In this document: one piece after another, positions 5,310 to 59,222 of the stretch
Layout of the letters: every line of letters starts with the position of its first letter
Position numbering within the stretch: position 1 is the first letter of the stretch
Assembly: GCF_003918875.1 (NCBI RefSeq)
Contig: NW_025766959.1
Coordinates: 124,001-188,000, forward strand
Direction: 5' to 3'
DNA length: 64,000 nucleotides
DNA from: Haliotis rubra
Taxonomy: Eukaryota
Notes under the pieces: generated by a model
Databases searched by the model: none
Told to the model about the DNA's origin: nothing
What the model saw: the letters and a program-made list of their open reading frames with translations, nothing else
Translations under genes and position numbers: made by a program

Positions 5310-6384
5310 TTAATGTTTTTGAAAGGCTTGGAAGAGCAGGCCACAACCTTCACAGCAGGGGTCCAACAGACAGTGGACACACATCCCGTAGAACTTCTTG
5401 ATGCAGCCACAGTTCAGTTCCAAGAACTTGTACATTGGCGTGATGATCCAGATGTGGGCGAATGCGACCACAGCAAATTCACAACCCCATCGAGCAGCTA
5501 TGTAGATTCCGTAGAAAAACGTGAGAAGGTTGTAGACACAGCTCTTCCAGCAGTTGAAACACCTGAAGGAGTTGACCCACACACAGTCCAAGCTGTGGAT
5601 GCCCTCTGGCTCAGCCAAGATATCCTCGAAGGTGACCTGTAGTGAGATAAGAATATTTAACAAACATCTCTTCTCTGTTTTCATTTCGTCTTGTGGCAAA
5701 TCACCTTGTAACCATGGCTATTAGCAGACATATAGGATATTTCTTTCACAATACGTTTCAACGATCACTTACAAACAGTTGCATGTGTATTAACAACTTT
5801 AAATCTGTACCATAAAAATGCAGCAAATCACAAATATTATTGTAAGCATTTAATATCATGGTCAAACGAACTCTGTTTATTCAAACCTGTTTTGACGCAA
5901 GCTTCCAACAATGAATAAACACCTAACTTGTACCATCAGATATACCTGATCTTCTTGAATGTAAGTGTTTCGTATTGAAACTGTCCTTAACGTGCTAAGG
6001 ACAATGTATCCTATTGCTAACTGTACATGTTGCAGGTGATTTCTTTATGGAATTCAAATGTCAATCAGTTGTCATGTATATGATACATCACATACATTAT
6101 TGTTCAAGTGTACTTGCCCGTATGTTTCAACCAAGTAACACAAAGAGCGCTAGTCATTAAGTACCAGCCTTCAATGGTGACCACCCTAGCTGTTGTATCA
6201 CCATTAAATATAACTCAAGCAAAGTGATCCTTTTCTTAGATGCGTTTTGCAGTCCGTACTCAAAAACGGCTTCAATCATCACCGAGTTAAATCTGTTGAC
6301 AAGGTTAATGATACGTTTATAGTTATTTACCTGGATGTGGTCGTTGATGTTGTTGGGATCCCTGTTGGTCAAATCAATGTCCAT
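5310..6384 (-). CDS. Caveolin family protein, copy 1 (exons 6384-6331 and 5636-5310; 126 aa)
   Basis: Exon 1 MDIDLTNRDPNNINDHIQ, GT donor at 6330, AG acceptor at 5637-5638; exon 2 VTFEDILAEPEGIHSLDCVW...HIWIITP...DPCCEGCGLLFQAFQKH*. Caveolin signature FEDxxAEP; colinear with vertebrate CAV1/CAV3. Confidence 0.95.
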
Positions 6385-6455
6385 GGCTGAGCTAGGTATG
6401 TGATCAACTCCGAAGGTGTATGGTCAGCTGATGTCCTTCATTTGTGACCACAGAC

Positions 6456-6463
6456 TTTATATA
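6456..6463 (-). promoter_or_regulatory. TATA box of caveolin copy 1
   Basis: TATATAAA about 72 nt upstream of the ATG; position conserved in copies 2 and 3. Confidence 0.7.
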
Positions 6464-7399
6464 CGTCCATGTTAGTGATTGTATCCATGGACGCAACTGT
6501 AATCCCTGCCCAGTTACAAATGAAGACCTTGTAAATGAACAAAGGACCATTTCATAACAGATAATCCGAGTATTGTGTTCTCGGCGGAGCGTTTAATGTC
6601 TGTTTGCCTGTTGTTCAACGCCCCACTCGGCAATTTTCAACTATATGCCAGCCTGTAAATAAACGAGTCTGAACCAGGCAATCTAATGATCCAGTGATTT
6701 GGGATACAGTTAGATGTTTTAACCCAGTCAGCCAAGAGGGCCCACCCGATAACGTTAATTACTAGCCTCTTACAACAAGCAGGGGTTGCTGAAGACCACA
6801 TCTCGGGAAAGCCTGATTGCAAACATGCGATATCACTTACGGTTGAATTTGTTGAATTGTAACCACAATACAAAAGTATATTTTGATTGATCAAGGAATG
6901 TGTTCAAATGCTATACATTAGGTCGAGTTGGGTTGGCGTTCTTAAGGAAGAACAAGTCACATATTGTAATTAGATCACACAGATTCTCCAGTAAAAGTGT
7001 ATGCATGTGTTTTATTGAGAATTAGACGAGTAACGGGGAATCTGGTAACAAGCAGAGCTAGTTATACTAATAACCTAATTATGGATCTTGTATTAAAGCT
7101 GTCTTTCATAGTGTTTCATATCTGGAAGTAGAGCATTTCTACACCATTTCATACACGTGAAGATCCAGTATGGGGTGTCAGCCTCACTGACTGGTTGATG
7201 CATGTGATATCGTAGATCGATCCTCATGAGGGCATTCACTGGATTGTCTGATTGGTGTTTGTGGTTTAATATTCCAGCAACATGGCGGCGATCTGTAAAT
7301 AGTCGAGTCTGGACCAAACAATCCAGTGATCAACATCATGGGCACCGGTCTATGCAATTGTGATACGATGACATGTGTCAACCAAGTCAGTCTGACCAC

Positions 7400-7865
7400 C
7401 AGCCTGGTTCCCAGTGTCTGTTGCGCTAATGCTCAGACACTGACCCCGGCAACCATTACTGCAAGGCGGCCACTTATGTGTTGGGCAACACTTGATACAT
7501 TTACTGGAATAATTCGAGAACGGGAGGTTAGAATTTTTTCATAGCATCTTCATCGATACTATGGCAAATTATACGTCACCAGAACAACGCCCATCGTTAC
7601 CTTTAGCCCACGAAAACGTTATTTAAGTAGTTTCGAAACACGAAAATCGTCGTGACAAGGGCGAAATGTAAACAATAACACACACCTCATTTTCAGCACC
7701 GACATATGCGTTGATATTTCGTGTCAGCTCGCTTTTGTCACGAAATCGTACACATAAAACATGAACGACCACACTCATTGAATATAGTTGGCATCTTTAT
7801 TTTAACAAATTTGATGACATATATTTCGATGATTTGGACCCATTTACCCCTCTTGTGTGCTGGAA
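7400..7865. mobile_element. One arm of the long-TIR element family seen at 61241
   Basis: Colinear similarity to 61241-61690; interrupts a SINE-B copy on its left and is followed by the Tc1 copy. Confidence 0.75.
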
Positions 7866-7905
7866 ATAATCCGAACTAGAAAATGGTTCTTACCATATAT
7901 ATATA

Positions 7906-9290
7906 TACTGAACCTAATTGAAAACGCACCAGTGTAAAATTGTCCATATTTTCATCAAGATGGATTTCAGCATGACGATGATCAATGAATATAACTAACA
8001 TGAAGTCGAAGGGCATGTCCAGTTGAAAAAAAGGCTTTAGAAACAAATTCCTGTCGACAGTATGACTCTTAATTCCAAAATGCATCAACAAGCAGCCACG
8101 CCATAAATAAAGCACGAATTTCATTCTGAAATCATACTGACTGTGACATTAAAAGCAGGTGTCTGAGAACCGATTCTCATTGCTTCACTAACGATTGTGA
8201 AACGAGGACAGAAATTGCGAGGTTAACAGCTCACGAAAGAGAACGTGCACTAGGCATGATTCAGGTTGGCACCAGCAGCAGGGATATTGCTCGACAACTT
8301 GGACTTGGCCACTCCACCACCGTTAGGCTTCATAGACGACATCAGTAGACAGGCAGCACCCGTGACCTTCAATGACCTTGGCAACAACGTGTTACGACGC
8401 TCCATCAGGATCGCTAAATTGACCTTGTCCATTTCAGTGATTGAACATTGCCGACTGCCAGCACTGCTGCACTAGTTCAAGGTTGACGTGGGGGTCATCA
8501 GCGCTGACTCCATGCGACGCCGTCTACACGCTACAGGGCTCCATGCTCGACGTGGCATGGTGTGGTAGTCACTGACGAGTTACGTCTTCATCTACGTATC
8601 GCTGACTGCCGATTACGTGTTTGGCGTAGACCTGGTGAACGTTATGCTGATGAGTGTGTGGTTCAGACAGACCTTTGGGTGGTGGGAGTGTCATGGTCTG
8701 GGGTGGAATAAATTACAATCACAGGACTGCCTTCGTGTCTGTCAATGGAGAGTTTATGCCCTTTATTACCCTAAGCAGATTCTTCAGAATCACATCGTAT
8801 CTGTCTTCAATCACCACCAAGATGTCAATACTTTTCAACAGGACAACGCACGGGCACACACAACAAGACTTCCCATGCAGTATATGGCCCAGCAACACAT
8901 CCAGGTTATTCATTGGCCAGCACAGTCGCCAGATGTATCCCCCATGGAGCACTTGTGGGACGAAATTGGTCAAATTCATTCGCGGCGACAACAGATGCGA
9001 AACATCCGGGAACTCGAGGCTGCACTACTGCAGAAGTGGAATGCCATCCTCAAGAACTCTATTCGGACGCTTATTGACTCAATGAGGAGACGTTGAACTG
9101 CATGTGTCAATGCAAATGGCGGTCACACGCGATATTGACTTTTTGATTGACCCCACGTGTGTTTGATCCTTTCTGACTGTGGAACATTTCAATGAATGAG
9201 CGTCTTTTCTATGTTTTTGTCAGTCGTCCATCTGTTATTATCCACTCAAAAAATATAAAAAATATCAATTCCTTACACGTGCGTTCAGTA
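7906..9290 (+). mobile_element. Decayed near full-length Tc1-like DNA transposon
   Basis: RLTAHERERALGMIQVG N-terminus, GGGSVMVWGGI, FQQDNARAH, WPAQSPDVSPMEHLW, ANGGHTRY* in broken frames; partial TIRs TACTGAAC..AACGCAC..GTGTAA / TTACAC.GTGCGTTCAGTA, both next to TA runs. Confidence 0.85.

Positions 9291-9293
<3 letters not shown>

Positions 9294-9356
<63 letters not shown>
9294..9356. repeat. (TA)n microsatellite
   Basis: Seen directly. Confidence 0.97.
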
Positions 9357-9360
<4 letters not shown>

Positions 9361-11077: not shown

Positions 11078-11226
11078 GTGAGTGAGTGTGGTTTTATGCC
11101 ACTTTTTGCAATATTCCAGCAGAAATGGGGGACACCAGATATGGGCTACACACATTGCATTCATGTGGGGAATCGAACCTGGGTGTTTAGCATAACGCTT
11201 TAACCACTAGGCTACCCCATCGCCCC
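11078..11226 (-). mobile_element. SINE family A
   Basis: Similar to the 58136 and 62671 copies. Confidence 0.8.
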
Positions 11227-13267: not shown

Positions 13268-14508
13268 CTAATGTTTCTGAAATGCTTGGAAGAGCAGACC
13301 ACAACCTTCACAGCAGGGGTCCAACAGACAGTGGACACACATTCCGTAGAACTTCTTGATGCAGCCACAGTTCAGTTCTAGGAACTTGTACATTGGCGTG
13401 ACGATCCAGATGTGGGCGAATGCGACCACAGCAAATTCACAACCCCATCGAGCAGCTATGTAGATTCCGTAGAAAAACGTGAGAAGGTTGTAGACGCAGC
13501 TCTTCCAGCAGTTGAAACACCTGAAGGAGTTGACCCACACACAGTCCAAGCTGTGGATGCCCTCTGGCTCAGCCAAGATATCCTCGAAGGTGACCTGTCG
13601 TGAGATAAAAAGTATTTAACAAACATCTCTTGTCTGAGTTCTTTTCGTCTTGTGGCAAATCCCTAGCTATTAGTAATGGACATACCAGGTATGTCTTTCA
13701 CATATTTCATTTACAAGCAGTTCATATACATTAACATCTCTACATCTGTCCCATAAAAATACAACAAAGTACACATATTTTATCAGCATTTATACACATT
13801 ATGGTCATAAGAATTATATTCTTCAGGGTGAAACACTGTAAATATTGGTGAAAATAAAAATGGTATTTTCACTGAGTAGAATAGCATGTTATTTTACTGA
13901 GTAGAATATCATTTTTGCCTGGAACTACTGGAACCCAACTACTGTAGTTGGGTTGCGTAATAAAATGCAGACTATGGTCAGAATATAATTAATAGAATAA
14001 ATTATAAATATCCTCTATTTATTCAAACCTGCTTTTGACACAAGCTACCAACAATGAATAAACACATAGTCATGAGGTCTACATGATTAAGGAAATTGTC
14101 CTTAACTGGGTATGGATAATGTATCGTATTGCTAACTGTACATTACTACGTAATTAACTTCATCAATTCAAACTCTACGGTTGTCAATCACGTGTCATGC
14201 ATGTATGGTATAGCACTATAATTATTGTTCAAGTATACTCGCCCATATACATAACAACCAAGAAACACAAAGAGCGATGGCAATGGTGATTACCCTAGCT
14301 ATCCTATCGTCATAAATTATACCTCAATCAAAGTACCTCTTTTTCTTATTTGTGTTTTACACAAAAACAGCTTCAATCATCACCTATTAATTCTTTTGCA
14401 TTCCCACGAGTTAAATCTGTTGACTAGGTTATTGATACGTTTATAGTTATTCACCTGGATGTGGTCGTTGATGTTGTTGGGATCCCTGTTGGTCAAATCA
14501 ATGTCCAT
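13268..14508 (-). CDS. Caveolin family protein, copy 2 (exons 14508-14455 and 13594-13268; 126 aa)
   Basis: Same exon 1 peptide, GT-AG phase-0 intron 14454-13595, 327-nt exon 2; protein differs from copy 1 only by I>V in HIWI(I/V)TP. Confidence 0.95.
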
Positions 14509-14587: not shown

Positions 14588-14857
14588 CGTCCATGTTAGT
14601 TACTGTATCTACATACACAACTGAAATCCCTGCCCAGTTACAAATAACACTTTGTAAATGAACAAAGGAACATTTCATAACAGATAATCCGAGCATTGTG
14701 CTCTTGGGGGAGCGTTTAATGCCGATATTTGTTTTGTTTGCCCGTTGTTTAACGCCGCATTGTCCAGCTATATGACGGCGGTCTGTAAACAGTCGCGTCT
14801 GAACCAGGCAATCCAGTGATTGACATGAGCCTCAATGTATACATTCGGGATATGATT

Positions 14858-15483
14858 ACAGACAGACAGACAGGTTTATTCAGGCCATGGACCAAAAACA
14901 ACGGTTACACAATTCATAATTGCACAGTCGATAGTTGCACAGTTTGATATACAATAATTTAACAGAGAAACGATGGATGGTAACCCAAGAGTAAATAAGT
15001 ATAACATGTTCATCATACTTTTCATTTTAAAGATATGATAAACACATTTAGTAGTTTGTACCATGTTCACAAACTTTACCATACTAGGTCTGGCAATAGC
15101 ATGCTTTGGTAGATAACGATTCCTTATACTTAAATATTTTGGACAAATGAGCAGGATATGGTATTCATCTTCAAGATCGTTCACACAAATAGGACACAGT
15201 CGGTCCTGTAATGGTGTTTTAAGGCGTAGTCCATCTGCCCTTTTCAATCATCAGTGTATGTGAACTCAATCTGAACCGTGTAAGAGCAATTCTATATTTC
15301 CTTAAATCAATATGTACTAGATACTTTTCAAAATTTAAACGATCTTTAATTTGCAAATATAATCTAGTTTCACTCAAGGAATTTAAATCCTTTTTGCACA
15401 TCTGAGAGTAAATGTTATAGATACGCTGTTTAAATTCTGCTATAAATCCATGGTAATTACTGAATCCTTGAGAAACCCAAGGC
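14858..15483 (-). mobile_element. 5'-truncated non-LTR retrotransposon (RTE-X-like 3' end)
   Basis: FKQRIY..RFRLSSHTLMIEKGRW / DRLCPICVNDLEDEYHILLICPKY; ends in AATAAA plus a (TGTC)n tail; splits a SINE-B copy. Confidence 0.8.
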
Positions 15484-15904: not shown

Positions 15905-16297
15905 GGAGTCAGCCTAACTGACTGGTGTATGTCATACGTAGATCAATGCTCATGAGGTAATTCACTGGGTTGTCTGGTCCATACTCGATTGTATTGTTTG
16001 ATTGTTGTTTGTTCTTTAACGCCGCACACAGCAGTATTCCAGCTATATCGCGGCAGTCTGTAAATAGTCCAGCCTGGACCAGACCAATCAAGTGATCAAC
16101 AGCATGAGGATCGATCTACCCAACTGAGATACGATGACATGTTTCAACCAACTCAGCGAGCCTGAACTCCCGATCCTGTTAGTCGTCTGTTCCGTCAAGC
16201 ACAGGTTAACCCGGATTTTCACAGGTATCGATTATATGTAAACCGCCATCGTATTGCTTGGTTGTGACCAAGTGTGCCGTTAAGCAACAAACAAACA
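15905..16297. mobile_element. Nested family-B copies in opposite orientations
   Basis: A minus copy (about 15995-16225) sits inside a plus copy (15905-15990 and 16226-16297). Confidence 0.7.
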
Positions 16298-19473: not shown

Positions 19474-20618
19474 CTAATGTTTCTGAAATGCTTGGAAGAG
19501 CAGGCCACAACCTTCACAGCAGGGATCCAACAGACAGTGGACACACATTCCGTAGAACTTCTTGATGCAGCCACAGTTCAGTTCCAGGAACTTGTACATT
19601 GGCGTGACGATCCAGATGTGGGCGAATGCGACCACAGCAAATTCACAACCCCATCGAGCAGCTATGTAGATTCCGTAGAAAAACGTGAGAAGGTTGTAGA
19701 CGCAGCTCTTCCAGCAGTTGAAACACCTGAAGGAGTTGACCCACACACAGTCTAAGCTGTGGATGCCCTCTGGCTCAGCCAAGATATCCTCGAAGGTAAC
19801 CTGGTTTATAAACGAAATAATTTATATGCAGTATATTATTGCTTGTTATTCTTATTGTCTGATGAGCGATTGTATTTTTGCCATCTCGAACAGTTTCATG
19901 TAGGAAGTCAGTAAACGTGGAAAGTAATTAGTCTCGTTCTCACCGGTTATATACTGTAATATGGTTGAACCAGGGTGAAGGCTTTATGGATATACGGGCA
20001 TATCTTTATTCATATTTGATATCCGTAAAACTTTCCCCGTTGTTCATCGCACTAACTCCTATACGTCAAAGAAGTTACTACATGGTTGAACAATATTACA
20101 ACTATGGATGTATCTCTGTTTCATTAAGTTATGAACTACAAATATCTTGTATTGAGGACAAAACAGTTTCGTATCTCAATTTTATAAGATAGATTAATAT
20201 ACGCTTATGGTACCCGTGATAAGGAGGGATTCGTTCTCTTTGAGTATGAAATATGCGTGACAGCTTTGCCAAATTTAGAAGATCCAAGATTAAGTCGTGT
20301 GCTTTAACAAAACCTTTTCGAGCTGTAATGGTTATCGTGTAAGTCATCATGGCATATTATAGCTGTTATCACTACTACATGTCTATAACTAAGTATGCAT
20401 GTATCCTTTACCAACGATAATAGTTGATACCAACAGTTAATCTTGAATGTACATCATAAATTCATAGCCAAAAGAGGCACGGAAATCTTCCTTTCAACCT
20501 AGCAGATGATGATGATGTCGCTAATTTCATTTATATTTGTTAATGATATTTTACGAAATATTACCTGGATATGGTCGTTGATGTTGTTGGGATCCCTGTT
20601 GGTCAAATCAATGTCCAT
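19474..20618 (-). CDS. Caveolin family protein, copy 3 (exons 20618-20565 and 19800-19474; 126 aa)
   Basis: Exon 1 MDIDLTNRDPNNINDHIQ, GT-AG intron 20564-19801, exon 2 protein identical to copy 2. Confidence 0.95.
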
Positions 20619-25129: not shown

Positions 25130-26121
25130 ATGGACGCTAGTTTAGACCGGGACAACAACATCATGTCAAGGTAAGAGTCAGAATACAGTGATAGCAAATT
25201 GGAAGAATGGCAAAGTGCAGGTAAATTCACGTTATGCATAAAAATCTAGGGCATCTATTTTACGTTGAACTTCAAATGATTGCCTGTAACAATTTCAGTT
25301 TAACTTTAAGGCACCTGACGGTTAACGTTAATGGATGGATGGGTGAATGGAAGGATGGATTGGATGGATGGATGGATGGATGGATAGATGGATGTGTGGG
25401 TGGGTGGCTGGCTGGCTGGCTAAATGGATATAGATGGATGGGTGAGTGAATGGGTGGAATGGATTTGTTCTATATTTTCCCCTGACGCCAAACAACTTCA
25501 ACTTGTCAAACGGGATAAGTGTTTTACGACGCACACAATCCACTGACGAGGAGACATTCAGCGACTATGCTAAATCACGGTCGCGTGTGTTCTATAGTAA
25601 ACTGAAAGAGTGGGTATTGTTTTAATTATGAAATCTGGACATAAAGATGCGTACTGGCGCCTCAACAATGTTACAGCCAAGAAATCCAATGTCTGTCAAT
25701 GTCCCCCTGAGCTCAGTGTTAAATGTAAAGCTTTAGTGAAGATTTTGACAGTGAAGATGCATTGCATTTTGCTTGCTGTTTTGATTAATTCCTTTGCATT
25801 CAGGTAACGTTACGGACTTCTGCGCTGAGCCTGGTTCTTACAGCTCCTTGTGTGTATGGAGCTTCTCCTACCTGTGTTTTCCTGTGTAACAGGCACCTAC
25901 ACAAGCTCCGGACACTGTTTTGTGGTTTATGCATTGCCATGGACTGGGGCTGTGAGTTCGCTTGGGTTAGATTTACCCACATTTGGTTTATATCCCTTTA
26001 TTGCAACATATTGGAGCTTAACTGTAGCTGCCTACAGAAGATATACGGAGTGGGTGTGCATTGTGCAGTAGATCCTTGCTGTGATGCATTTGGCATTATA
26101 TTATATGCATTTAGAAAGTGA
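25130..26121 (+). pseudogene. Caveolin pseudogene (exon-1 relic 25130-25170, exon-2 relic 25804-26121)
   Basis: Exon 1 MDASLDRDNNI then frameshifted HVK before GTAAG donor (41 nt, out of phase; splicing gives an immediate TAA). Exon 2 is split over frames: DFCAEPGSYSSLCVWSFSYLCF then ..TLFCGLCIAMDWGCEFAWVRFTHIW..ELNCSC..DPCC..FRK*. Confidence 0.85.
25331..25462. repeat. (GGAT/GGCT)n microsatellite in the pseudogene intron
   Basis: Seen directly. Confidence 0.9.
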
Positions 26122-27003: not shown

Positions 27004-28102
27004 ATGGTTGATCTACTGAATCGTGATCCTAACAACATCAACGACCATATTAAGGTAATTTCTTGAATCATTACTGGAACTGACACGGAAACATCATACA
27101 CCTGAAACTCGAGAATCATGTCTGTGTAAATCTTTGATACATAAAAATACTTAAGAGCGCTATGTCTTTCATGTTAATGTCATTATGCCTGGATATTTAT
27201 CCAAGTGTCTGAATTGACATTAATGTTTGTAAAGGGTTAATGTTTTCTTGAGACCTAATGGTACCATACTGTTAGAATATATGGATTATATACAAAGGCC
27301 AATTTCACAAGCCATTGAGAAATGTTAAGTTCATACACTTCTTGCGTTAGCTGTCCAATAAGTAATCTCAGCTACAACTGCTTATGCAGTACATTGAAAT
27401 GTAGTTTTCACCTATACTGAAACGTGCATGCTTTAAATATGTGGTAGTACTTGTACTAGTCCGGGTTAATTATGTTGCCCTCAGAGATAACACACTGGAG
27501 TTACATGGATATCCTACTCAGACACATTACACTGACTCCAATCCTTGTATATTGTTAATGCCGATCGGGATGAGAAAAACAATTGACATCTTTACAATGA
27601 TACAGCTTGGCAATCAAACCACCGACCCTCCGTTTTGAGAATCTCAGTACAACGGGGAAAGTTCTTTGGATATACAACTTCTATATTTTAAGTTTTATAT
27701 CCATAGAACTCTCCAAGTTGTTCATCACACCAACCTCTAAATGCCAGTACATGTATTGTTTTCCGTTTTAATCAGGTTTCCTTCGAGGATGTCCTTGCTG
27801 AGCCAGAGGGAGCTCGAAGCATCGACTGTGTGTGGAGCGCATCCTACACATGCTTCAGTTGCTGTAAAGGATGTCTCTACAAAATCATGACACTGTTGTG
27901 TGGCATCTGTATCGCTCTGTACTGGGGCTGTGAGTTTGCGTTGATCGCCTTCACTCACATTTGGTACATCACACCCTGCTTCAAGGTAATGGAGCTCAAC
28001 TGTGGCTGTCTGAAGAAGCTGTACGGCATGTGTGTGCACTGCGTTCTGGATCCCTGGTGCGAGTCCTGTGGGATGCTGTTCATGGCTTTCGGGAAGAAAT
28101 GA
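27004..28102 (+). CDS. Caveolin family protein, copy 5 (exons 27004-27054 and 27776-28102; 125 aa)
   Basis: MVDLLNRDPNNINDHIK|GT..AG|VSFEDVLAEPEGARSIDCVW...DPWCESCGMLFMAFGKK*; AATAAA at 28471. Confidence 0.95.
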
Positions 28103-37522: not shown

Positions 37523-39114
37523 ATGGATCTACTGAACAGAGACCCCAATAACATCAACGACCACATAAAGGTAACAGTAATTTGTAACCTAATGTAATCT
37601 ATTATATATCAGAAATAGTATTAGAAATAATATTAACGACAATTCAGCTAAATCTTATATATTAGCCTTTTGTAGGGCTTTTTATCAGGTCTCAAGTGAT
37701 CTAGGCATCTTGTTTACAAAATGTGTACCATTATGAGTTGGATTATTTTCAACATCATCGCCTTTACAACTACATCAGAGGCTATTGATTTAAGTGAGTG
37801 AGTGAGTTCAGTTTTACGCTGCACTGAGCAATATTCCAGCTGTGGCGGCGATCTGTAAATAATCGAGTCTGGGCCAGACGTTCCAGTGATCAATAGCATA
37901 AGCATCGATCTACGCAGTTGGGATACGATGACACGTGTCAACCAAGTCATTGAGCCTGACCATCCGATCCCGATATCTCCTTGGTTACTCCCGTTAGTCG
38001 CCTCTTACGACAAACATGGGTTACTGAAGATCAATATTCTAACCCGGATCTTCACGGGTGCTATTGATATAAAGATTCAAATCAAGGCTCGATTTCAGAG
38101 AAGTAAACCTACTTGCACCAGGTGCAACCTACGATAAAGACCTAGTTGCACCAGCCAAATTCCAGTTGGAACATAGTGTGTTTAAATCGCCAGAAGTTTC
38201 GGTGCACATAATATTTCCGTGATGTAGTACCCATGAAACCATAGCAACACAGAGACACAGCTGATATCTGTTTTCAAGAGCTGTCATAGCCGAGACGTGT
38301 CTATGAATAGCAATGTTTCGGTGCCATAGCTATTCAAAGTTTAGAAGAAAAATGAGCTGACATATTTATGCTTATAATGTTAGATTCATCATTGATTTAT
38401 TTCTCAAAAATTGACTTGCACCTTGTGCAAGTTAGACTCATAACTAGGTTGCACTTTGTAATACTGGGTTGCACCAATGCAAGTAACAAAGCACTAAATC
38501 GAGCCCTGCAAATGCATGGTCTAAATGATGTCGGGGAAATCTAACAAAGCTGTTTTTATTAGTAGTATTATTATAGCGTATTTTCACAAGTTCTCTTTAT
38601 CCATTACAATCAATATACAAAGCCCCTGAGCAATGTTGGTATTAGAGTGTAACAATCCACTTTGAATTAAACTCGCTATTTCTATATTTCATGTGATATG
38701 TCGCTGGAAGAAGGAGACAGTACTTTGATTAAAATAATTATAGAAATGTTTTGGCCTTTGGATTAATACATGAAATGTTTCATCCAGGTCGAGTTTGAAG
38801 ATATCTTGGCCGAGCCAGAGGGAGCTCGAAGCATCGACTGTGTGTGGAGCGCATCCTACAAATGCTTCAATTGCTGTAAAGGATGTCTCTACAAAGTCCT
38901 GACACTGTTGTGTGGCATCTGTATCGCACTGCAATGGGGCTGTGAGTTTGCCTCGATAGCCTTCAGCCACATCTGGTGCGTCACACCCTGCTTCAAGGTA
39001 ATGGAGCTCAACTGTGGCTGTCTGAAGAAGCTGTACGGAATGTGTGTGCACTGCTGCCTGGATCCCTGGTGCGAGTCCTGTGGGATGTTGTTTATGGCTT
39101 TCGTGAAGAAATGA
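37523..39114 (+). CDS. Caveolin family protein, copy 6 (exons 37523-37570 and 38788-39114; 124 aa)
   Basis: MDLLNRDPNNINDHIK|GT..AG|VEFEDILAEPEGARSIDCVW...MLFMAFVKK*; close paralogue of copy 5. Confidence 0.95.
37793..38058 (-). mobile_element. SINE-like repeat family B (intron of caveolin copy 6)
   Basis: About 250-bp repeat (CCCGTGAAGATCCGGGTTAGAAT..GCTGGAATATTGCT..tail); further copies or fragments near 6600, 7160-7400, 10120, 11680, 14735/15484, 15905-16297, 45795, 55470, 62915. Confidence 0.8.
38083..38508. mobile_element. hAT-like MITE in the intron of caveolin copy 6
   Basis: TIRs CAAGGCTCGATTT / AAATCGAGCCCTG, repeated subterminal TTGCAC motifs, CAAAT direct repeat on both flanks. 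Confidence 0.75.
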
Positions 39115-45794: not shown

Positions 45795-46015
45795 TCTGTT
45801 TGTTTGCTTGTTTGTTTGTTTGTTGTTTAAACGCTGCACTCAGCAATATCCCAGCTCTTTGGCGGCGGTCTGTAAATAACCGAGTCTGGACCAGACTATC
45901 CAGTGATCAACAGTATGATCATCGATCTACGCAACTGGGATCAGCGAGCCTGAGTACTCGATCCCGTTAGTCGCCGCTTACGACATGCAGAGGTTGCTGA
46001 AGACCAGTTCTAACA
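45795..46015 (-). mobile_element. SINE-like repeat family B
   Basis: Colinear with 37793-38058; (AAAC)n tail. Confidence 0.8.
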
Positions 46016-47248: not shown

Positions 47249-48346
47249 TTAGGTATGTGGATCTTTTCTTTTCTTGAACACAGTTTCGCCTACCATCAAA
47301 ATTTCAGTAAGGGGATCACGTGATGTGTTGCGAAATACAAACGGGTAGACGGCATGCAAAAACTGGCATGGCAAGTTAACATAGGTGTGAGTGTTCTGTC
47401 TAATGTAACTGTCAACAAGAAAGTTATCCGAATGGCAGTCATCCGTCATATTCCCGTAAAATTCTTTGAGAATGAATTCCAGATTACGTGGAACTGGTAG
47501 AAACAAATGTTCAAAGGGTTGCCGTTGCAAAGGGAAAACTTCACTTTTCTTATACAGAAACAAAGGCATTGCTGAGGGACTTACTGACCATATATGGGAG
47601 ATGTCTTCGTTAAAGAAGGAAATATCCAAATATGGAAATTGATCGGGATGGTTAGCCTGATATTCCCTGAAATAAAACGTCCACCGATTGTTCTGAAAAA
47701 CGTCAATGTTGAACTGTGGTAAGACAGTCAGAGAAGAATGTAATTTCAACCAATCCGATTCGCGTACACAAACATGAGCACTTCCTGTCCAAGGAACGAA
47801 TCCCTGGTGCCGATACAAACCAAGCAAGGTGTCACCAAACAGAAAGTGACGTATACCGTTGCTATGACACACGTGCTCAAACACTTCTAGAGTCTGCATA
47901 AGTGATATCCGATCCTCGATGGTCATCACTGGTTGGTAAAAATTGAAATCTTTGAGGTATTTGAAGAAAATGTCTCTGCTTTGATTTTCAGTGAAGTACA
48001 TGTTTCCTTTGACAAGAACAGGAGATTTACCTTCATGAAATACAAGGTCATGAATTCGCCAGGGTGTGGAAAATCTGGACACATTCGTCAAGGACAGGCG
48101 TTCAAATTCATCCTTGTATTCAGGGCTGGTTCTGGAGACTTGTTGAACGTTGAAATTAAGATGATCAAATCGTGCTCTGATTACATGGTAGACATCTTGA
48201 TTTTTCAGTATTTTATTTACCCTGTCTTTCAGTTCATTGTGTGTAGATAACCATATTGTGATTATCACAACAAACACAATCAGAATGACCGTTTTCCTCC
48301 CAAATGTTTTTGTATCAACCTCTGCATGGACGTCCATTATTCCCAT
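47249..48346 (-). CDS. LicD/fukutin-related nucleotidyltransferase-fold protein, type II membrane (about 365 aa, single coding exon), catalytic motif degenerate
   Basis: N-terminal TM TVILIVFVVIITIWL; LicD motifs FL.GDTLLGLYRHQGFVPW, YLDISFF, EVFPLQRQPFE..LPVP...L...YG. Start taken at the first in-frame ATG after a TTTAG acceptor at 48378-48379; likely 5' non-coding exon with GTAAGT donor at 48537; AATAAA directly after the stop. Confidence 0.85.
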   Translation of the reverse strand: MGIMDVHAEVDTKTFGRKTVILIVFVVIITIWLSTHNELKDRVNKILKNQDVYHVIRARFDHLNFNVQQVSRTSPEYKDEFERLSLTNVSRFSTPWRIHDLVFHEGKSPVLVKGNMYFTENQSRDIFFKYLKDFNFYQPVMTIEDRISLMQTLEVFEHVCHSNGIRHFLFGDTLLGLYRHQGFVPWTGSAHVCVRESDWLKLHSSLTVLPQFNIDVFQNNRWTFYFREYQANHPDQFPYLDISFFNEDISHIWSVSPSAMPLFLYKKSEVFPLQRQPFEHLFLPVPRNLEFILKEFYGNMTDDCHSDNFLVDSYIRQNTHTYVNLPCQFLHAVYPFVFRNTSRDPLTEILMVGETVFKKRKDPHT

Positions 48347-48890
48347 CGAGTAATTCGACAACGGGATCCATGCATCACTAAAATATAATGAATACAAATG
48401 AACATACATGACGAATATACACCTAACAATACGATATATGATACGCCTTCCACGTAATCGATTAATACTTAATTCAGTATTAATTAACAAAAGTAATATT
48501 TATTCCTTAGTTTTGTAATCACCTGTCTCATACTTACCCTGGATAGCGATGCGACCTGTCGCGGAATACGTTGTTATTAGCGTGTTCAACAACAAACGCT
48601 TGTTAGCCACGTCACGTGGTACATACACAGCGGTGCAAGTTAAGGATGGCGACACGTGTTTTGACTACATTATTGCCATATGTAGAAATGTGCGTACCAT
48701 GACTCCACTTAATATTCAAAACACCAAAAAACATAAATCCATTTTATAGAGACACAGTCCGGAAACAGTCCGGAAACAGTCTCAAACATGAGAAACAACG
48801 CCCTACTAAACAACTGTAGGAATCATTTGTATTGTCGAGCATTTACACATACAATTTTAGATTGATAACCGTGAAAGTTGCAGTTCTCAA

Positions 48891-49795
48891 AGATCACTCT
48901 GAAGGAGATCGTCTACGATTTACAATATTGTTTCATTTATTCCACTCATGTCTGTTGCTATGGTGATATTTTCATAGGAACTCGTTTTATTATGTTCACG
49001 TATAAGCCTAACCTTTGGCTACCGATACATCAACAGAATGTGCCGATTATGATTCTATAACTTGACTCATGGGCACAGTAGCTGGACGTTGTTTGTTTGC
49101 TTACCGGTATAGGACAATCACTCTCCAGGACCACATCATATAAAGAGTGGAATCGTTCTAGAATCAGATCACTCCCCAGGACCACACCATATAAAGAGTG
49201 AATTCGTTCTAGAATCAGATCACTCCCCACGACCACATCATATGAAGAGTGAATTCGTTGTCGAATCAGACCACTCCCCAGGACCATATCATATATAGAA
49301 TGCATTTGTTGTAGAATCAGATCACTCCCAAGGATCATAGCATATAGAGGGTGAATTCGTTCTAGAATCAGATCGCTCCCCAGGACCATATCATTTTAGA
49401 GTGAATTCGTTCTAGAATCAGATCACTCCCCGGGACAATGTCATTTTAGAGTGAGTCAGGGATGTAGAATGAAATCAAATCCCTAAGACCATATCACTTC
49501 AGATCACTCTGAAGGAGATCGTCTACGATTTACAATATTGTTTCATTTGCTCCACCCATGTCTGTTGCAATGGTGATATTTTTATAGGATCTCGTTTTAT
49601 TATGTTCACGTATAAGCATAACCTTTTGCTACCGATACGTGAATACAATGTGCCGATTGTGATTCTATAACCTGACTCATAGAGTGAATTCGTTCTGGAA
49701 TCAGATCACTCCCCAGGACCATATCATTTTAGAGTGAATCAGGGATCTCGAATGAAATCAAATCCCCAGAACCATACTTCAGATCACTCCCAAGG
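48891..49795. repeat. 51-bp minisatellite interleaved with an about 180-bp duplicated block
   Basis: Unit GAGTGAATTCGTTCTAGAATCAGATCACTCCCCAGGACCATATCATATAAA (about 7 copies at 49115-49500, about 2 more after 49680); 48891-49070 is repeated at 49501-49680. Confidence 0.9.
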
Positions 49796-51249: not shown

Positions 51250-53087
51250 TATATCCGATAATGTTTAACTTGGGGTTGTATCTTCACAACACAATATAAC
51301 GGTCTCAGAAGCGATGCACACTATTTCAATATCATATATGGAGATTATTATTATAGGGTATTTATATAGCGCACATATCCACGAAACTAGTACATGCTCA
51401 AGGCGCCGAGGTGATGGTATCTTCTTCAGAGATGATTACAATAATGAGGCCGTGGTCCTAAGACGCTTTCAAAATGAAGGGATGATTATGTTTCATCAAG
51501 TTAATCAACTTTTTCGTTTTCATAAGAAAACATAATGATGAAAATTGTTACTTTTAATCCTGAATTAGGTATACAGTAATGATATTTACTTCAGGCACAG
51601 CAGAACTTAAACAGGACAGGAGTGATAATCATTGTGAATCAAATATAGTTAATGTCGGACATAATAAAATATTTGAAACGTTCCTTGAAAAGAATCCATA
51701 ACTTTAAAACAAACTAATCACAGGAAAACAGGTTGAATAAGAAGCATATACTTACTAGGCGTTTCTAATGTGGACAAACGCAACAAGATGACACTGAATA
51801 ACTTAAATTTCAAAATGAACAAATTGTGCCTGTTACTGTTCACTGGCATGCATACAACAGACGTGGAGAGGATGCAATTAACGCTTCAGTTGGGTACCTA
51901 GTTGTATTGTGGTCCGCTGACCCTATTGAATCAATCAAATTGTACTATATTTCACGTATAGTTCAAAGGACTTTAGCATTGATATGAGTCTTTATCAATA
52001 TGATGATTCAGCCTTGTGCGCGTATATTTGATATTCGACTCAATAGGTTCTGCAATTTTTCAATAGTAACGACGCCAGATGTGACTCTAGACTGAACTGT
52101 CTTTGGTTCGATACATTGTGCGTGTGTGTCGTGGACGGAGATGGTATCGATTTTGTACCAGATGATGGCGATGATTAGGTAGCGGATGGGGTCTTATATT
52201 TCTGGTTATGGGTTATAGCTTTCATTTTTACTCTTTTACTATTTGTAGCATGCTTATTGCCAGTTTAGTTTGCTGAAAATTAGTCACGTAGTTGATACTT
52301 CTAAATGTGCGTAAATGACATTATAATCTGCTTGGAAGGCATCATCGAGTATCGAGTTATTGACTTGGTAACAATATTTCCATCAAGTAACTCTTCACTT
52401 AAATGTATCAAAGTTTAGTCAAACTAAATTATTTGAGTAATGTATTTTAACGACCATACTATGAAATAATTACATATGTGGAAATACAGAAAACGCCAAA
52501 CGTAAATACACGACCAAGATGCTAACACAAGGTTACAACAACAAATATGGAGTTGAAAGTAAATGAAAAAATGTTTTTAGAATGTGGCATTAATACGCTT
52601 CCAAAATTGTCTGATTTGACATAAGAAAATATAAAAATTGTTTTATTTTCTATGTATCAATTTTTCCGTATAATAATGAATACATTTTAACTTTTTAATA
52701 AAGTTTTTAATCAATATGATGAAACTTACATCAAATCCATTCATGAGTAATACAGGAAACGGTCAACCGGAATCTCGTCATAGGATAAAGGAAGTTATAT
52801 ACGTTTGTTTTAACTTATCAATATGACCGTTATTGTATCCGTACCCTACTGTTGAGAATCTCTCCCTACACCTTGAATCAGCATCACAACACAAGTCCTC
52901 ATTGTAGACCCGCGTCAAAGGTCGATATGGCTTGCGTGACTTAAACATTTCCTTATGTTTTACAACCTTACAAATTTTGCTAAGGATGCCCCGAACCGAT
53001 GCTCCGGAAATTGTGTGGGGCTGCCTTTCAGGGAACTTCTTTGCCCTGCGATCTCTTTGAGTTGCACTTTGACCATTTGATCCTCAA

Positions 53088-53236
53088 GGGGCGGTGGGCT
53101 AGCTTAGTGGTTAAAGCGTTCGCTCGTCACACTGAAGACTCGGGTTCGATTCCCCACATGGGTACAATGTGTGAAGCCCATTGCTGGTGTCCCCCGCCGT
53201 GATATTGCTGGAATATTGCTAAAAGCGGCTTAAAAC
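53088..53236 (+). mobile_element. SINE family A
   Basis: tRNA-like head with A box and GGTTCGATTCC B box; (CTCA)n tail. Confidence 0.85.
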
Positions 53237-53500
53237 CAAACTCATTCACTCACTCATCCAATGTTGGATTCTTAGGACAAGTGGGATACTTTAACACAGG
53301 CCGCATTTCCATCAACACCGGCAGTAGCGACGAATACGTAATCGGGGTATGTCTGACATAGTAGGGAACGTCCGAGTCCGGTAGCCACGCGGTTTCCATC
53401 AAACCCCAGTGAGACCCTGTCCCAACGCACCCTCACTCACCTCCTCTACAGTAGTAGACCCTTGATGAGTGGATAGGCTCCAACATTTACAGACCACCGC

Positions 53501-55741: not shown

Positions 55742-55910
55742 TGAGTGAGTGAGTGAGTTTAGTTATACGCAGTTTATAGCAATGTTCCAGCAACGTCACG
55801 GCGGGGGACACCAGAAATGGGCTTCACGCATTGTACCCATGTGGGGAATGGAACCAGGCAACCAGGTTGACGAGCGAACGCTTTAAATAAGGTAGGCTAC
55901 CCCATCGCCC
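55742..55910 (-). mobile_element. SINE family A
   Basis: Full-length copy similar to the other family members. Confidence 0.85.
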
Positions 55911-57031
55911 CACTGACATGTTGACAACTATTGGCGGTCATCATGACAAATCGTAGTTCTGGTAACATCAAATGACTAGCCCGTAGCCTACTATGTGTGT
56001 TTAGGTGACTGTTATGTGTCAGTCTCTCAGTATTAATCGCGGAGATTGTCAATGGAAGCACAATACTGAAATGCTGGCGGGAAATACAGTGCTCTGTATC
56101 TGGCTTGTACTGATGTCAACGTCACGGATGAACCTTTTCAGTTATCTACTTACCAAGAGCAGATACCTTTTTTTAAATTAAAAAGTCATCCATCCAGCAC
56201 TACTTAGGATTGAGTCAATCAATTCGTGCACCTTCCCTTCCGTGGCTATTGCTGCTGCCACCTATTTGACTCAGTGTTGAAACCTTTTGCCACTGTCAGC
56301 CTTACGCTTCAATATAACGTATCAATCATTCATTGCTTTTAGGTGGTGGTTTTTCACTGGAACATCTTCCCTTGTCAACATTTCATTGCTTTCATATGCT
56401 ATTGCTGAATAAGGTCAGCTGAAGGCCGGTTTTGATTCACTACATGTGTGCAAAGTGTGAAGCCCATTTCTTGTGTCCGAAACCTTACTGATGGAATAAG
56501 AGTTAAAGCGGCGTAAAACCACAGTCATGCACACTCTCACTCACGCAGTCACTGATATAACCTCCAAGTGTAGTGTAACCATAAACACGTTATTGTATAA
56601 AAGACTTTTATTGATCACAGAAATGCGGAAAATACAAATATGTACAACATAATACTTTGTTGTTCTAATGCAATCTGTCCAGATCTGTACACGGACACAC
56701 GAACAGGAACACACGAGTTATGTCCCTTATTTTCTCGATAGGAGAAATTGTAGAAATATTTCCAGATGAGTTCCAAGTTCCAAGTTCCAGACGAGTTCCA
56801 AGACAAAATGGATACAATCCCTGGTTTAAAAGGTTAAGGAAAGAACCGAAAGATTACTTTTGACGAATGTATATCCATTTGCACTGCAAATCCGCACGAC
56901 GCTGCTTAATGCCAGTAAATCGACGAGCAGGCACTATAAATGGTCCTGTGGGAGGGTAGATGAGAACACAACACATTCCCAAGATGAAGGAAAGTCCTGT
57001 AAGAATCTTGGGAGGAAAAATTGTCCCTGTA

Positions 57032-59222
57032 TTATTGTTTGACTTGAATCCTACTGAAGAAGGCACCACAGGACTCACAGAACGGTGTCAGGCAGCAGTT
57101 GAGGCAGATTGTGTACACCTTCCTGAACATAATGCAGTCGATCTCGCAAGCTCTGATCTGGGGTGTGTACTGCCAGATGTGAGCACAGGCAAGCATGGCG
57201 TATTGCCAACCATAGCACAGACCGTAGATAGGACCACACAGGGTCATCAGCATGTAGCAGCATTTGAAGGCGCAGTTGAAGCATGTGTTGGTAAACTTCC
57301 AGCAACAGTCAAGACTGTGGGCACCTTCGGGCTCAGCCAAGATGTCCTCAAACTGGACCTGTAACAAGCCAAAATGGATCTGACTTTGTGTACAAAACTG
57401 ACCTTAACTAAGTATCAGATATTCATTTCACTACTGGTCTTTGACGGTCTCATGAGTAAATAAGGAATTCTGCATTTCAATTGTTTATTACATGCAACTC
57501 TCATAAAGCTCGTTTCACAAATCTTAATCTATAATTCTATAAACGTTCGTATGACAAACCATAGCATATATACACCTCTAACCTTCATATGATGTATCGT
57601 GGCAGAGATACTCCATATATGACAGATACATATTTGTAGATATATTCTCGAGCCTTCGTACTACTTATCATAACAGATCCAGACCCGTCGTATGACATGC
57701 ATTTGCAGATCTATTCCATAAACCTTCCTGGCCAAATCTATGTCTGTGTTTGTGTGGGTGTTGGCGGGGGTAGGATGGTCGGGGTAGGATGATGGGTAGT
57801 ATGGAGAAGTGCATATTTTTAGACGTTCAGGTTATTGAGTTTGGGACTGTTGCGTGCGTGTAATCTCGTACAGCACTTCAAGACATACACATGCTTCATG
57901 AGAAGTGGAAGAGATGATGTAGGAAAAACTACATTCCATTTCAGCACATAGATTATCAGTTACACCAATTCCATCCCCAACCCGTATTGCTATCAATGGG
58001 AATGATTGAAGGCTGCGCGCAGTGAGTGTTTGCTCCTTAGATAAATAAGTCACCCTTACTCAGTGTTATGCACACACTTAGGGAATAAGAACACATTGCA
58101 CGCTGCTTCTTAGAGATGATGCGAAAATCGATATACTGACTGACTGAGTTTGGTTTTACGCCGCTTTTAGCAATATTCCAGCAACATCACGGCGGGGGAC
58201 ACCAGAAATGGGCTTCACACATTGTACCCATGGGGATTCGAACCCGGGTCTTCGGCGTGACGAGCAAACGCTTTCACCACTAGGCTACCCCACCGCCCCA
58301 AAAATCGATATAAGCCTATATTATTCGATAAATGCCATTTTCCAAAACATGGCGTCCTGTAACATACATTTGTTCCTCTTTCTTCAGCCTGTTATACCAC
58401 AAACTGAATATGAATGGCTTCGATTGTCTTAATAAGTTCCAGTAAATACAAAATAATGAACAACATAAATTAATCAATCTATAAATGAATGTAAACCAAA
58501 TTAAAGAAACATAGATTTACACTGTCGGCATCACTGCATGAAACTCAAAATAACAGAATTATGTGTGACCTTACAGTGTTCTGCAGGAGTAATTGAAAGG
58601 TCGATTTCCTATAACGAATTAACGATATTTGGCCAAAGCCTTCGGTTGTTTAGTTTATGACCATGGGAACAATGCGTGTGAGTGTCGGTTGCTCGGTGAT
58701 TGTTGTCATGCATCAGGAATCGCGTCGTCACTTGCAAACACATCATAACAGCAACACCACCAGATGGTCTTCGGGTGTGGGAACAGAGAATGATCGATGA
58801 TTTTTCCCCATTTTCAAGAGATGAGAAAGATGCAGATTAAATTTTGTTTTGAATATTTATTAATTCAACAATGACACTTTCTTCACTTATTTTTCAACAG
58901 AATTTGATACATTCAAAAACCACAATGAACATTCATTGTAAATTTATATTCCCAATCGAAAACCTTTTCTCTGAAGTTTGATGCAAAGGAAACAATGTGT
59001 TCTTCCATGTGTTCTTTATATCTTTTTATCGTGGCGATTTTCTCATCATCTGAATTTGTATTCTGCCAGTAACCGATTATGTTAGGACTATCATTATTAC
59101 CACCACTCCTCGATTATGAAGTCAAAGTTTTAATTTTCAACTGAAGATAATGTGTTTTTTCTTACCTTTAAATGGTCATTGATGTTATTTGGATCCCGGT
59201 TGTCCATATCAATCTCGGCCAT
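57032..59222 (-). CDS. Caveolin family protein, divergent copy 7 (exons 59222-59166 and 57358-57032; 127 aa)
   Basis: MAEIDMDNRDPNNINDHLK|GTAAG..CAG|VQFEDILAEPEGAHSLDCCW...HIWQYTP...GAFFSRIQVKQ*; AATAAA on - at 56607-56612. Confidence 0.95.
58136..58299 (-). mobile_element. SINE family A in the intron of caveolin copy 7, TSD AAAATCGATATA
   Basis: Full-length copy with 12-bp flanking direct repeats. Confidence 0.9.

What the first reader, a model, noticed from the sequence alone, without database searches (positions are those of the whole stretch)
5310..59222. Expanded tandem array of minimal caveolins (6 intact genes plus a pseudogene in 54 kb)
Seen: seven caveolin loci in three sequence classes (copies 1-3; copies 5-6 plus the pseudogene; copy 7). 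Intact copies are 124-127 aa with almost no N-terminal extension, all with the same phase-0 intron and exactly 327-nt exon 2. Known: mammals have three caveolins, CAV1 and CAV3 have an intron at this position, and cavins are regarded as vertebrate-specific. Inference: a birth-and-death family of stripped-down caveolins that may build cavin-independent, possibly hetero-oligomeric membrane scaffolds.
Basis: partly seen in the sequence, partly recalled or inferred. Interest (0 to 1): 0.8.

Follow-up and report, generated by a model that had tools for sequence, protein, structure and literature searches.

The report
Abalone tandem caveolin gene cluster
This stretch of blacklip abalone DNA carries a row of short caveolin genes (seven working, one dead); they are real but already annotated in public databases, and similar rows occur throughout molluscs, so the family is ordinary and only its copy-correcting mode of evolution is worth noting.

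Summary
The window is Haliotis rubra contig QXJH01000291.1, positions 124001-188000. It carries six intact two-exon caveolin genes of 124-127 aa. Each has a phase-0 intron before V-x-F-E-D and a 327-nt exon 2. There is also one pseudogene.

RefSeq already names six of these seven genes 'caveolin-1-like'.

The copies are not assembly artefacts. Their introns and flanks are diverged or unalignable, and H. rufescens has the same gene order.

The 'minimal' form is not an abalone novelty. Caveolins of 124-135 aa with the same intron lie in tandem rows in a clam, a chiton and a whelk.

Two old mollusc-wide lineages sit side by side here: c0-c6 in one and c7 in the other.

Evolution is mixed. The pseudogene is the positional orthologue of a gene intact in H. 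rufescens. Copy 2 is an unequal-crossover chimera. Exon 2 of c0-c3 is kept alike within each species, which points to exon-limited gene conversion.

Disc formation and cavin-independence are inferences.

The parts
724..783 (-). c0 exon 1 (20 codons, MADMIDLVDRDPNGINNHIT, GTAAG donor). Exon 2 lies about 0.7 kb left of the window. The gene is XP_046573915.1, 128 aa.
5310..6384 (-). c1. Exon 2 is 5310-5636 (327 nt with stop), the intron is 5637-6330 (694 nt, phase 0) and exon 1 is 6331-6384. Product 126 aa = XP_046573960.1.
13268..14508 (-). c2. Exon 2 is 13268-13594, the intron is 860 nt and exon 1 is 14455-14508. Product 126 aa = XP_046573961.1 or XP_046573962.1; c2 and c3 encode the same protein, P0025. 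It is a chimera: the intron and the 5' end of exon 2 are c1-like, and the rest of exon 2 and the 3' flank are c3-like.
19474..20618 (-). c3. Exon 2 is 19474-19800, the intron is 764 nt and exon 1 is 20565-20618. Product 126 aa, identical in protein to c2.
25130..26121 (+). c4 pseudogene. The exon-1 remnant (25130-25170) has 3-nt and 7-nt deletions and a stop at the old donor. In the exon-2 remnant (25804-26121, 318 nt) the first roughly 27 codons are frameshifted and the FEDxxAEPEG signature is lost. It is the positional orthologue of intact XP_046358275.1 (H. rufescens).
27004..28102 (+). c5. Exon 1 is 27004-27054, the intron is 721 nt and exon 2 is 27776-28102. Product 125 aa = XP_046573969.1.
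37523..39114 (+). c6. Exon 1 is 37523-37570, the intron is 1217 nt and exon 2 is 38788-39114. Product 124 aa = XP_046573970.1.
47249..48490 (-). LicD-family ORF lying between c6 and c7. It is a conserved neighbour, not a caveolin: H. rufescens has a LicD-like gene in the same position next to the c7 orthologue.
57032..59222 (-). c7. Exon 2 is 57032-57358, the intron is 1807 nt and exon 1 is 59166-59222. Model of 127 aa. It belongs to the second, divergent caveolin lineage and is the positional orthologue of H. rufescens XP_046358097.1.

Best explanation
The window holds part of a large, conserved cluster of ordinary caveolin genes in the abalone Haliotis rubra.

What each gene encodes. Each intact gene has two exons and encodes a 124-128-aa protein that is little more than the caveolin core. 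That core comprises the pin motif, the FEDxxAEPEG signature (hook), the scaffolding region and the long hydrophobic helices. It lacks the disordered N-terminus of vertebrate CAV1 and ends five residues short of the CAV1 C-terminus.

How the proteins probably work. By homology with human CAV1 (inferred, not shown), they most likely sit in the cytoplasmic leaflet as multi-protomer discs that shape or organise membrane, without cavins.

How the cluster evolves. Three processes act together:
- Unequal crossing-over makes new copies. c2 is a c1/c3 chimera.
- Gene conversion limited to the coding exons keeps exon 2 of c0-c3 nearly identical within a species, while introns and flanks drift apart.
- Occasional copies die. 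c4 is dead in H. rubra but intact in H. rufescens.

Ancestry. The short protein, the intron position and the tandem arrangement are ancestral to molluscs. Two old mollusc-wide lineages (c0-c6 and c7) lie side by side in the cluster.
For: Family membership:
- Pfam Caveolin at E 1e-27 to 1e-41, covering model positions 7-129 of 133.
- P0001 aligns to human CAV1 (7SC0) residues 48-168 at E 4.6e-31.

Gene models:
- The models equal RefSeq proteins.
- GT..AG phase-0 introns are present.

The copies are real:
- c1 and c3 share only exon 2 (5308-5639 against 19472-19803, 97%) and exon 1 with about 150 nt upstream. Their introns are unalignable.
- H. rufescens has the same order: class 1 three times plus the 128-aa type, then the P0080 type, class 2, a LicD-like gene, and class 3 at least seven times.
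- Unique flank matches tie c0, c1, c3, c4 and c7 to their positional counterparts.

Purifying selection: dN/dS is 0.03-0.16.

Concerted evolution:
- Exon-2 nucleotide identity is 96.0-98.5% within H. rubra and 96.9-99.1% within H. rufescens, but 90.2-92.0% between the species whatever the position.
- Paralogue dS is 0.08-0.14, against orthologue dS of 0.30-0.35.

Chimera: c2 agrees with c1 at exon-2 sites 3 and 48, and with c3 from site 99 onwards. Its intron is c1-like and its 3' flank is c3-like.

Pseudogene.

Mollusc-wide pattern:
- The profile search gave 347 hits, mostly 124-135 aa, with many species holding several genes on one scaffold.
- Tandem rows were seen directly in Ruditapes (3 genes in 22 kb), the chiton Liolophura (4 in 21 kb) and Babylonia (3 in 22 kb).
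- Those genes have the same phase-0 intron, with exon 1 of 51-60 nt and exon 2 of 324-330 nt.

Two lineages: c7 and its kin fall in a clade (SH-aLRT 98) with Aplysia, Lymnaea, Littorina, Patella, a chiton and bivalves. c0-c6 form a Haliotis-only clade (SH-aLRT 88) elsewhere in the tree.
Against: - No short spliced contig carries these exact proteins in the collection; each was seen on one contig only.
- Disc formation, membrane insertion and independence from cavins rest on homology alone.
- The monomer AlphaFold model is one long helix (pLDDT 81, pTM 0.38). It gave no specific structural match.
- The proteins stop where the human C-terminal beta-strand has barely begun, so a central barrel may be missing.
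- The tree is a quick search on 130 columns with many unresolved forks.
- Low dS among paralogues could owe something to constraint on synonymous sites rather than to conversion alone.
- The history of the third 126-aa copy differs between the two species and is not fully resolved.
Confidence: 0.8

Rival explanations
1. The near-identical copies c1-c3 are assembly artefacts: uncollapsed haplotypes or a mis-assembled repeat. Only one class-1 gene would then exist.
For: Exon 2 of c1-c3 is 97-98.5% identical and the c2 and c3 proteins are identical. Read depth could not be checked.
Against: - Introns differ in length (694, 860 and 764 nt). They are unalignable between c3 and c1/c2, and flanks are 57-81% identical. 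Haplotypes would match throughout.
- An independent assembly of H. rufescens has three 126-aa genes plus the 128-aa gene in the same order.
- H. cracherodii and H. asinina also carry several class-1 proteins.
Confidence: 0.02
2. The family evolves by pure birth-and-death. On this view the likeness of the c0-c3 exons reflects recent independent duplications in each species plus purifying selection, with no gene conversion.
For: - There is a dead copy (c4) and a chimeric copy (c2).
- The third 126-aa copy seems to have arisen differently in H. rubra and H. rufescens.
- c5 and c6 each have their own orthologue in H. asinina, with no homogenisation.
Against: - c0, c1 and c3 have positional orthologues in H. 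rufescens, supported by unique flank and intron matches, so they predate the species split.
- Yet their exon 2 groups by species, and paralogue dS (0.08-0.14) is well below orthologue dS (0.30-0.35).
- c0 keeps its own exon 1 across species while its exon 2 matches c1-c3 of the same species.
- The c1-c3 similarity stops within 3 nt of the ends of exon 2.
Confidence: 0.1
3. Most copies are silent or redundant relics, and only one or two caveolins per lineage are actually used.
For: No transcript evidence was obtained here. One copy is already dead. Large tandem families often contain unexpressed members.
Against: - All six intact copies keep open frames, canonical splice sites and the invariant residues of the family.
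- dN/dS is 0.03-0.16 within and between species.
- The dead copy shows what relaxed constraint looks like here: only 66% protein identity to its orthologue, with several indels.
- A class-3 protein of H. discus discus was deposited separately as 'caveolin-1' (ANK58183.1). Whether it is cDNA-derived was not checked.
Confidence: 0.08
4. The proteins share the caveolin sequence family but have a function other than shaping membrane as discs. For example, they could be heavily acylated lipid-organising or cargo-binding proteins, given 12-17 cysteines and the shortened C-terminus.
For: - There are 12-17 Cys in the 108 residues of exon 2, against three palmitoylated Cys in human CAV1 (the human number is from memory).
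- The C-terminus ends at the position of human residue 173, so the beta-strand is cut short.
- The c7 lineage has a long stem branch and altered core motifs.
- Han et al. 2025 report that beta-strands and termini vary among caveolin clades (PMC12330381).
Against: - The pin, signature, scaffolding and spoke regions align to CAV1 without large gaps.
- Diverse caveolins, including ones without a pin motif, still form discs in that study (PMC12330381).
Confidence: 0.12

Closest known systems
Human caveolin-1 (PDB 7SC0), a Type II-CAV in the sense of Han et al. 2025
   Same: - Residues 2-121 of c1 align to CAV1 residues 48-168 at E 4.6e-31.
- The pin-like IDLxNRDP motif and the FEDxxAEPEG signature are present.
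- The hydrophobic helical core is present.
- The last intron is at the same codon boundary, in phase 0. The human exon sizes are from memory.
   Different: - There is no disordered N-terminus: residues 1-47, including Tyr14, are absent.
- The protein is five residues shorter at the C-terminus, so the beta-strand is truncated.
- There are 12-17 cysteines.
- No cavin partners are expected in molluscs (established knowledge, not tested here).
Short caveolins of other molluscs and a nemertean, annotated 'caveolin-1-like' or 'caveolin-3-like' (e.g. Lottia LOTGIDRAFT_189239, Ruditapes, Liolophura, Babylonia, Lineus)
   Same: - Length of 124-135 aa.
- The same two-exon structure, with a phase-0 intron before V-x-F-E-D.
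- Tandem rows of three to four genes within about 20 kb.
   Different: - The Haliotis cluster is larger: at least 15 genes in about 105 kb in H. rufescens.
- Its c0-c6 and c7 groups are Haliotis-only expansions within two older lineages.
Vertebrate CAV1-CAV2 neighbour pair
   Same: Caveolin paralogues lie next to each other on one chromosome and can co-assemble (established knowledge).
   Different: - The vertebrate case has two old, divergent genes, not a many-copy array.
- No exon-limited homogenisation is known to me for that pair.
Concerted evolution of tandem gene families by exon-limited gene conversion (globin and similar families)
   Same: Coding exons are more alike within a species than between orthologues, while introns and flanks diverge.
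   Different: The pattern is seen here in a membrane-scaffold family. Exon 2 is homogenised among c0-c3, while exon 1 of c0 stays distinct.

Membership tests
Caveolin (Pfam PF01146) | Match to the family HMM above the curated cut-off (25 bits) | tested here: met
   Exon-2 translations score 95-116 bits. Full RefSeq products score 120-141 bits and cover model positions 7-129 of 133. The remnant of the c4 pseudogene scores 38 bits.
Caveolin (Pfam PF01146) | Signature motif FEDVIAEP(EG) at the start of the hook structure | tested here: met
   F-E-D-[IV]-L-A-E-P-E-G is present in all six intact exon 2s. It is lost in c4 through a frameshift.
Type II-CAV (Han et al. 2025, PMC12330381) | Pin motif N-terminal to the signature motif (human CAV1 residues 49-60) | tested here: met
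   Exon 1 encodes [IL]DLxNRDPNNIN, which aligns to human IDLVNRDPKHLN at residues 48-60. That the motif defines Type II comes from the paper.
Type II-CAV (Han et al. 2025, PMC12330381) | C-terminal beta-strand that builds the central barrel | tested here: inconclusive
   The alignment ends at human residue 168, and the protein ends at the position of residue 173. The monomer model shows coil after residue 121. The paper says beta-strands vary among clades.
Caveolin (structure) | Protomer fold like 7SC0 and assembly into a multi-protomer amphipathic disc | tested here: inconclusive
   The monomer AlphaFold model is a straight helix (pLDDT 81, pTM 0.38). Foldseek found no match. The VIA-align wide search found only generic coiled coils at Z 6.1-6.5 and rmsd 10-21 A. 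No multimer prediction tool was available.
Caveolin (function) | Forms caveolae or membrane buds when expressed | not testable with these tools
   This needs expression in E. coli or in CAV1-null cells.
CAV1/CAV3-type gene structure | Phase-0 intron immediately before the codon two residues upstream of FED | tested here: met
   The intron is present in all seven H. rubra genes and in Ruditapes, Liolophura, Babylonia and H. rufescens genes.

The most novel reading that the evidence does not exclude
Exon 2 encodes the whole oligomerisation surface. It is kept nearly identical among c0-c3 by gene conversion, while exon 1 (the pin motif) and the regulatory DNA stay distinct. The copies could therefore co-assemble into mixed discs, and homogenisation would be favoured because it keeps protomer interfaces compatible. 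The cluster as a whole (class 1, class 2, class 3) would then provide a combinatorial set of cavin-free membrane scaffolds that is particular to molluscs.
Probability: 0.15. Interest if true: 0.55.

Novelty: new member of a known kind. Interest (0 to 1): 0.3.

Why it matters
Caveolins are studied almost entirely in vertebrates, where cavins are needed for caveolae. Molluscs carry many short, cysteine-rich caveolins in tandem rows and have no known cavins. This makes them a natural test of what the bare caveolin core can do.

The abalone cluster also gives a clean example of exon-limited concerted evolution beside gene death in one array.

None of this changes what a caveolin is. The genes are already annotated, and the pattern is widespread in the phylum. 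The value lies in the evolutionary detail and as a source of minimal constructs for structural work, not in a new kind of system.

Tried and rejected
- **Reads.** There is no expression, splicing or depth evidence.
- **Fold comparison.** Foldseek against the PDB gave no match. The VIA-align wide search gave only generic coiled coils. The monomer model is a straight helix, so these searches say nothing about the fold.
- **Literature.** Searches on caveolin with abalone, Haliotis, oyster, Crassostrea, mollusc plus tandem duplication, and disk abalone found no paper describing mollusc caveolin arrays. The only useful side result was that a Caveolin-1/3 transcript is among the top gill-enriched genes in Mytilus (PMC4581086).
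- **Ungapped dN/dS.** The values for c7 against the other classes, and for c5 against the 324-nt H. rufescens exon, are invalid because of indels. I disregarded them.
- **Right of the window.** I could not fetch the H. rubra DNA beyond the window's right end, because no H. rubra class-3 protein id was listed. I used H. rufescens synteny instead.
- **Joined spliced models.** Searches used exon references or database protein ids. One script checked only that annotated products are reproduced by a two-exon model.
- **Assembly-artefact reading.** I considered and rejected it; see the rival explanations.

Full report
**Where the window comes from.** The exon-2 translation of copy 1 matches XP_046573960.1, 'caveolin-1-like [Haliotis rubra]', at 100% identity. 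A look-up of a neighbouring protein places the window on assembly GCA_003918875.1, contig QXJH01000291.1, at about 124001-188000.

**Checking the observation.**
- tblastn with four exon-2 translations finds seven caveolin-like loci and no others.
- Six have an uninterrupted exon 2 of exactly 327 nt behind a YAG acceptor.
- All six pass the Pfam Caveolin model by a wide margin.
- A scan for short ORFs ending in a GT donor and containing RDP...IN, and then a degenerate DNA pattern (7 matches against 0.08 expected), locate the first exons.
- The gene models follow, all with phase-0 GT..AG introns of 694-1807 nt:
  - c1 5310-6384(-), c2 13268-14508(-) and c3 19474-20618(-): 126 aa each.
  - c5 27004-28102(+): 125 aa.
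  - c6 37523-39114(+): 124 aa.
  - c7 57032-59222(-): 127 aa.
- RefSeq proteins P0001, P0025 (two accessions), P0033 and P0029 have exactly these sequences.
- I did not send joined spliced models to any search. Searches used exon references or database ids.

- The seventh exon-1 match, at 724-783(-), is the first exon of an eighth locus, c0 (XP_046573915.1, 128 aa). Its exon 2 lies about 0.7 kb left of the window.
- No further caveolin exon lies in the next 10 kb to the left.

**The pseudogene.** Copy 4 is a true pseudogene in this assembly.
- Its exon-1 remnant (25130-25170) has lost 3 and 7 nt relative to the H. rufescens orthologue, and runs into a stop.
- Its exon-2 remnant (25804-26121) reads the first roughly 27 codons out of the ancestral frame, so the signature motif is gone.
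- Its closest relative is P0080 (XP_046358275.1, H. rufescens, intact, 124 aa). P0080 sits in the same place, 0.9 kb upstream of the c5 counterpart. The same cluster also holds an H. cracherodii protein, XP_071083004.1 (124 aa).
It is nevertheless a separate gene lineage that died in H. rubra.

**Are the copies real?**
- A self-comparison of the window shows that c1 and c3 share only exon 2 (5308-5639 against 19472-19803, 97%) and exon 1 with about 150 nt upstream (90%).
- Introns of c3 and c1/c2 align no better than chance. Flanks are 57-81% identical.
- H. rufescens, assembled independently, has the same layout on JALGQA010000022.1. In order it holds:
  - at least seven class-3 genes;
  - a LicD-like gene;
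  - three 124-aa genes, the first being P0080;
  - three 126-aa genes;
  - the 128-aa gene.
- That is at least 15 caveolin genes in about 105 kb.
- Unique flank matches tie c0, c1, c3, c4 and c7 to their positional counterparts.

**Extent of the array.**
- Besides c0 on the left, the class-3 cluster at 90% identity has 34 members across four Haliotis species.
I could not fetch that DNA, so this remains an untested lead.
- Within the window, nothing caveolin-like lies between 59.3 and 64 kb. In H. rufescens, by contrast, the next class-3 gene is only 2.3 kb from the c7 orthologue.

**How it evolves.**
- Selection is purifying: dN/dS is 0.03 among c1-c3, 0.27 for c5 against c6, 0.12-0.16 for class-1 orthologues and 0.04 for c7 against P0042.
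- The key result is a contrast in exon-2 identity:
  - 96.0-98.5% among c0-c3 of H. rubra;
  - 96.9-99.1% among the four H. rufescens genes;
  - only 90.2-92.0% between the species, whatever the position.
- Paralogue dS is 0.08-0.14, while orthologue dS is 0.30-0.35.
- c0, c1 and c3 have positional orthologues with residual intron and flank similarity, so these genes predate the species split. Their coding exons must have been homogenised since then.
- c0 keeps its own exon 1 in both species, yet shares the species-specific exon 2.
- This is concerted evolution by gene conversion restricted to exon 2, and to exon 1 among c1-c3.
- c2 is a chimera. Its exon-2 sites 3 and 48 and its intron are c1-like. 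Sites 99 onward and its 3' flank are c3-like.
- In H. rufescens the extra 126-aa gene has the opposite make-up (5' c3-like, 3' c1-like). The third copy therefore seems to have arisen or been remodelled independently.
- 'Birth-and-death' is thus half the story: it applies between classes, while class 1 evolves in concert.

**How unusual is it?**
- A profile search returns 347 caveolins at E below 1e-8. Those listed are mostly 124-135 aa.
- They come from gastropods, bivalves, a chiton and a nemertean.
- Many species hold several on one scaffold, for example Dreissena, Mactra, Ruditapes, Babylonia, Liolophura, and Potamilus with neighbouring locus tags.
- Direct look-ups show three genes in 22 kb in Ruditapes, four in 21 kb in Liolophura and three in 22 kb in Babylonia.
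- In each of these, the annotated product is reproduced by a two-exon model with the same phase-0 intron: exon 1 of 57 nt and exon 2 of 324-330 nt.
- The short protein, the intron and the tandem habit are therefore ancestral to molluscs.
- In a quick maximum-likelihood tree (96 rows, 130 columns, many open forks), c7 and its Haliotis kin form a long-stemmed clade. That clade sits inside a well-supported group (SH-aLRT 98) with Aplysia, Lymnaea, Littorina, Patella, a chiton and bivalves.
- c0-c6 form a Haliotis-only clade (SH-aLRT 88) among the other mollusc caveolins.

**What the proteins are.**
- P0001 aligns to human CAV1 (7SC0) from residue 48 to 168 with one single-residue gap.
- The protein begins at the pin motif, which Han et al. 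2025 (PMC12330381) describe as specific to Type II caveolins.
- Pfam model positions 7-129 of 133 fill residues 2-124 of 126.
- An AlphaFold monomer model (pLDDT 81, pTM 0.38) is a coil followed by one long helix. It finds no specific structural neighbour, which is uninformative for a protein whose shape depends on the oligomer.
- That these proteins form discs in the inner leaflet and act without cavins is inference. It rests on homology, and on the report that very diverse caveolins form discs (PMC12330381).

**Literature.**
- Multiple caveolin paralogues in bilaterians are known (Kirkham et al. 2008, as cited in PMC12330381).
- I found no paper on mollusc caveolin arrays.
- A Mytilus RNA-seq study lists Caveolin-1/3 among the most gill-enriched transcripts (PMC4581086).

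**Verdict.** The genes belong to a known, already annotated family, and their architecture is common to molluscs. The new points are the exon-limited concerted evolution of class 1, the lineage-specific death of c4, and the size of the Haliotis cluster. Interest is modest.

Noticed in passing
window 724-783 (-): First exon of an eighth caveolin gene (c0, 128 aa, XP_046573915.1). Its second exon lies left of the window, so the array extends beyond the finding's coordinates.
   Followed up: yes
window 47249-48490 (-): A 413-aa ORF with a LicD-family N-terminal match (E 4e-10) lies between c6 and c7. H. rufescens has a 685-aa LicD-like model at the same place next to the c7 orthologue, so it is a conserved neighbour.
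   Followed up: partly
window 34180-34251 (+): An intact tRNA-Asp (GTC) gene lies between c5 and c6. Rfam scores it at 61 bits, and ARAGORN agrees.
   Followed up: partly
window 4700-4851, 11078-11226, 53087-53254, 55744-55911, 58137-58299, 62670-62837: A dispersed repeat of about 165 bp, 75-91% identical between copies and on both strands. It is also present several times in the H. rufescens loci and looks like a SINE.
   Followed up: no
window 7268-7400, 14733-14860, 16005-16207, 37811-38059, 45808-45977: A second dispersed repeat of 130-250 bp. One copy lies inside the c6 intron. It recurs in the H. rufescens cluster.
   Followed up: no
window 8617-9096 (+), 22362-22688 (-), 44556-45396 (-): Broken Tc1/mariner-type transposase remnants (Pfam DDE_3 and HTH_Tnp_Tc3_2) lie between the caveolin genes.
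   Followed up: partly
window 48891-49680: A tandem repeat region just beside the LicD ORF. It contains a repetitive 119-aa ORF (49030-49389, -) built of units resembling VLGSDLILERIHSLYD, with no Pfam match.
   Followed up: no
L005 203-1287 (H. rufescens JALGQA010000022.1): This class-1 gene has a c3-like 5' side and a c1-like 3' flank, the mirror image of H. rubra c2. The third 126-aa copy therefore seems to have formed independently in the two species.
   Followed up: partly
P0036 (H. discus discus caveolin-1, ANK58183.1): In this deposited class-3 protein the segment EGAHSID is absent from its usual place after AEP and appears about 50 residues later. This is probably an error in the deposited sequence.
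   Followed up: no
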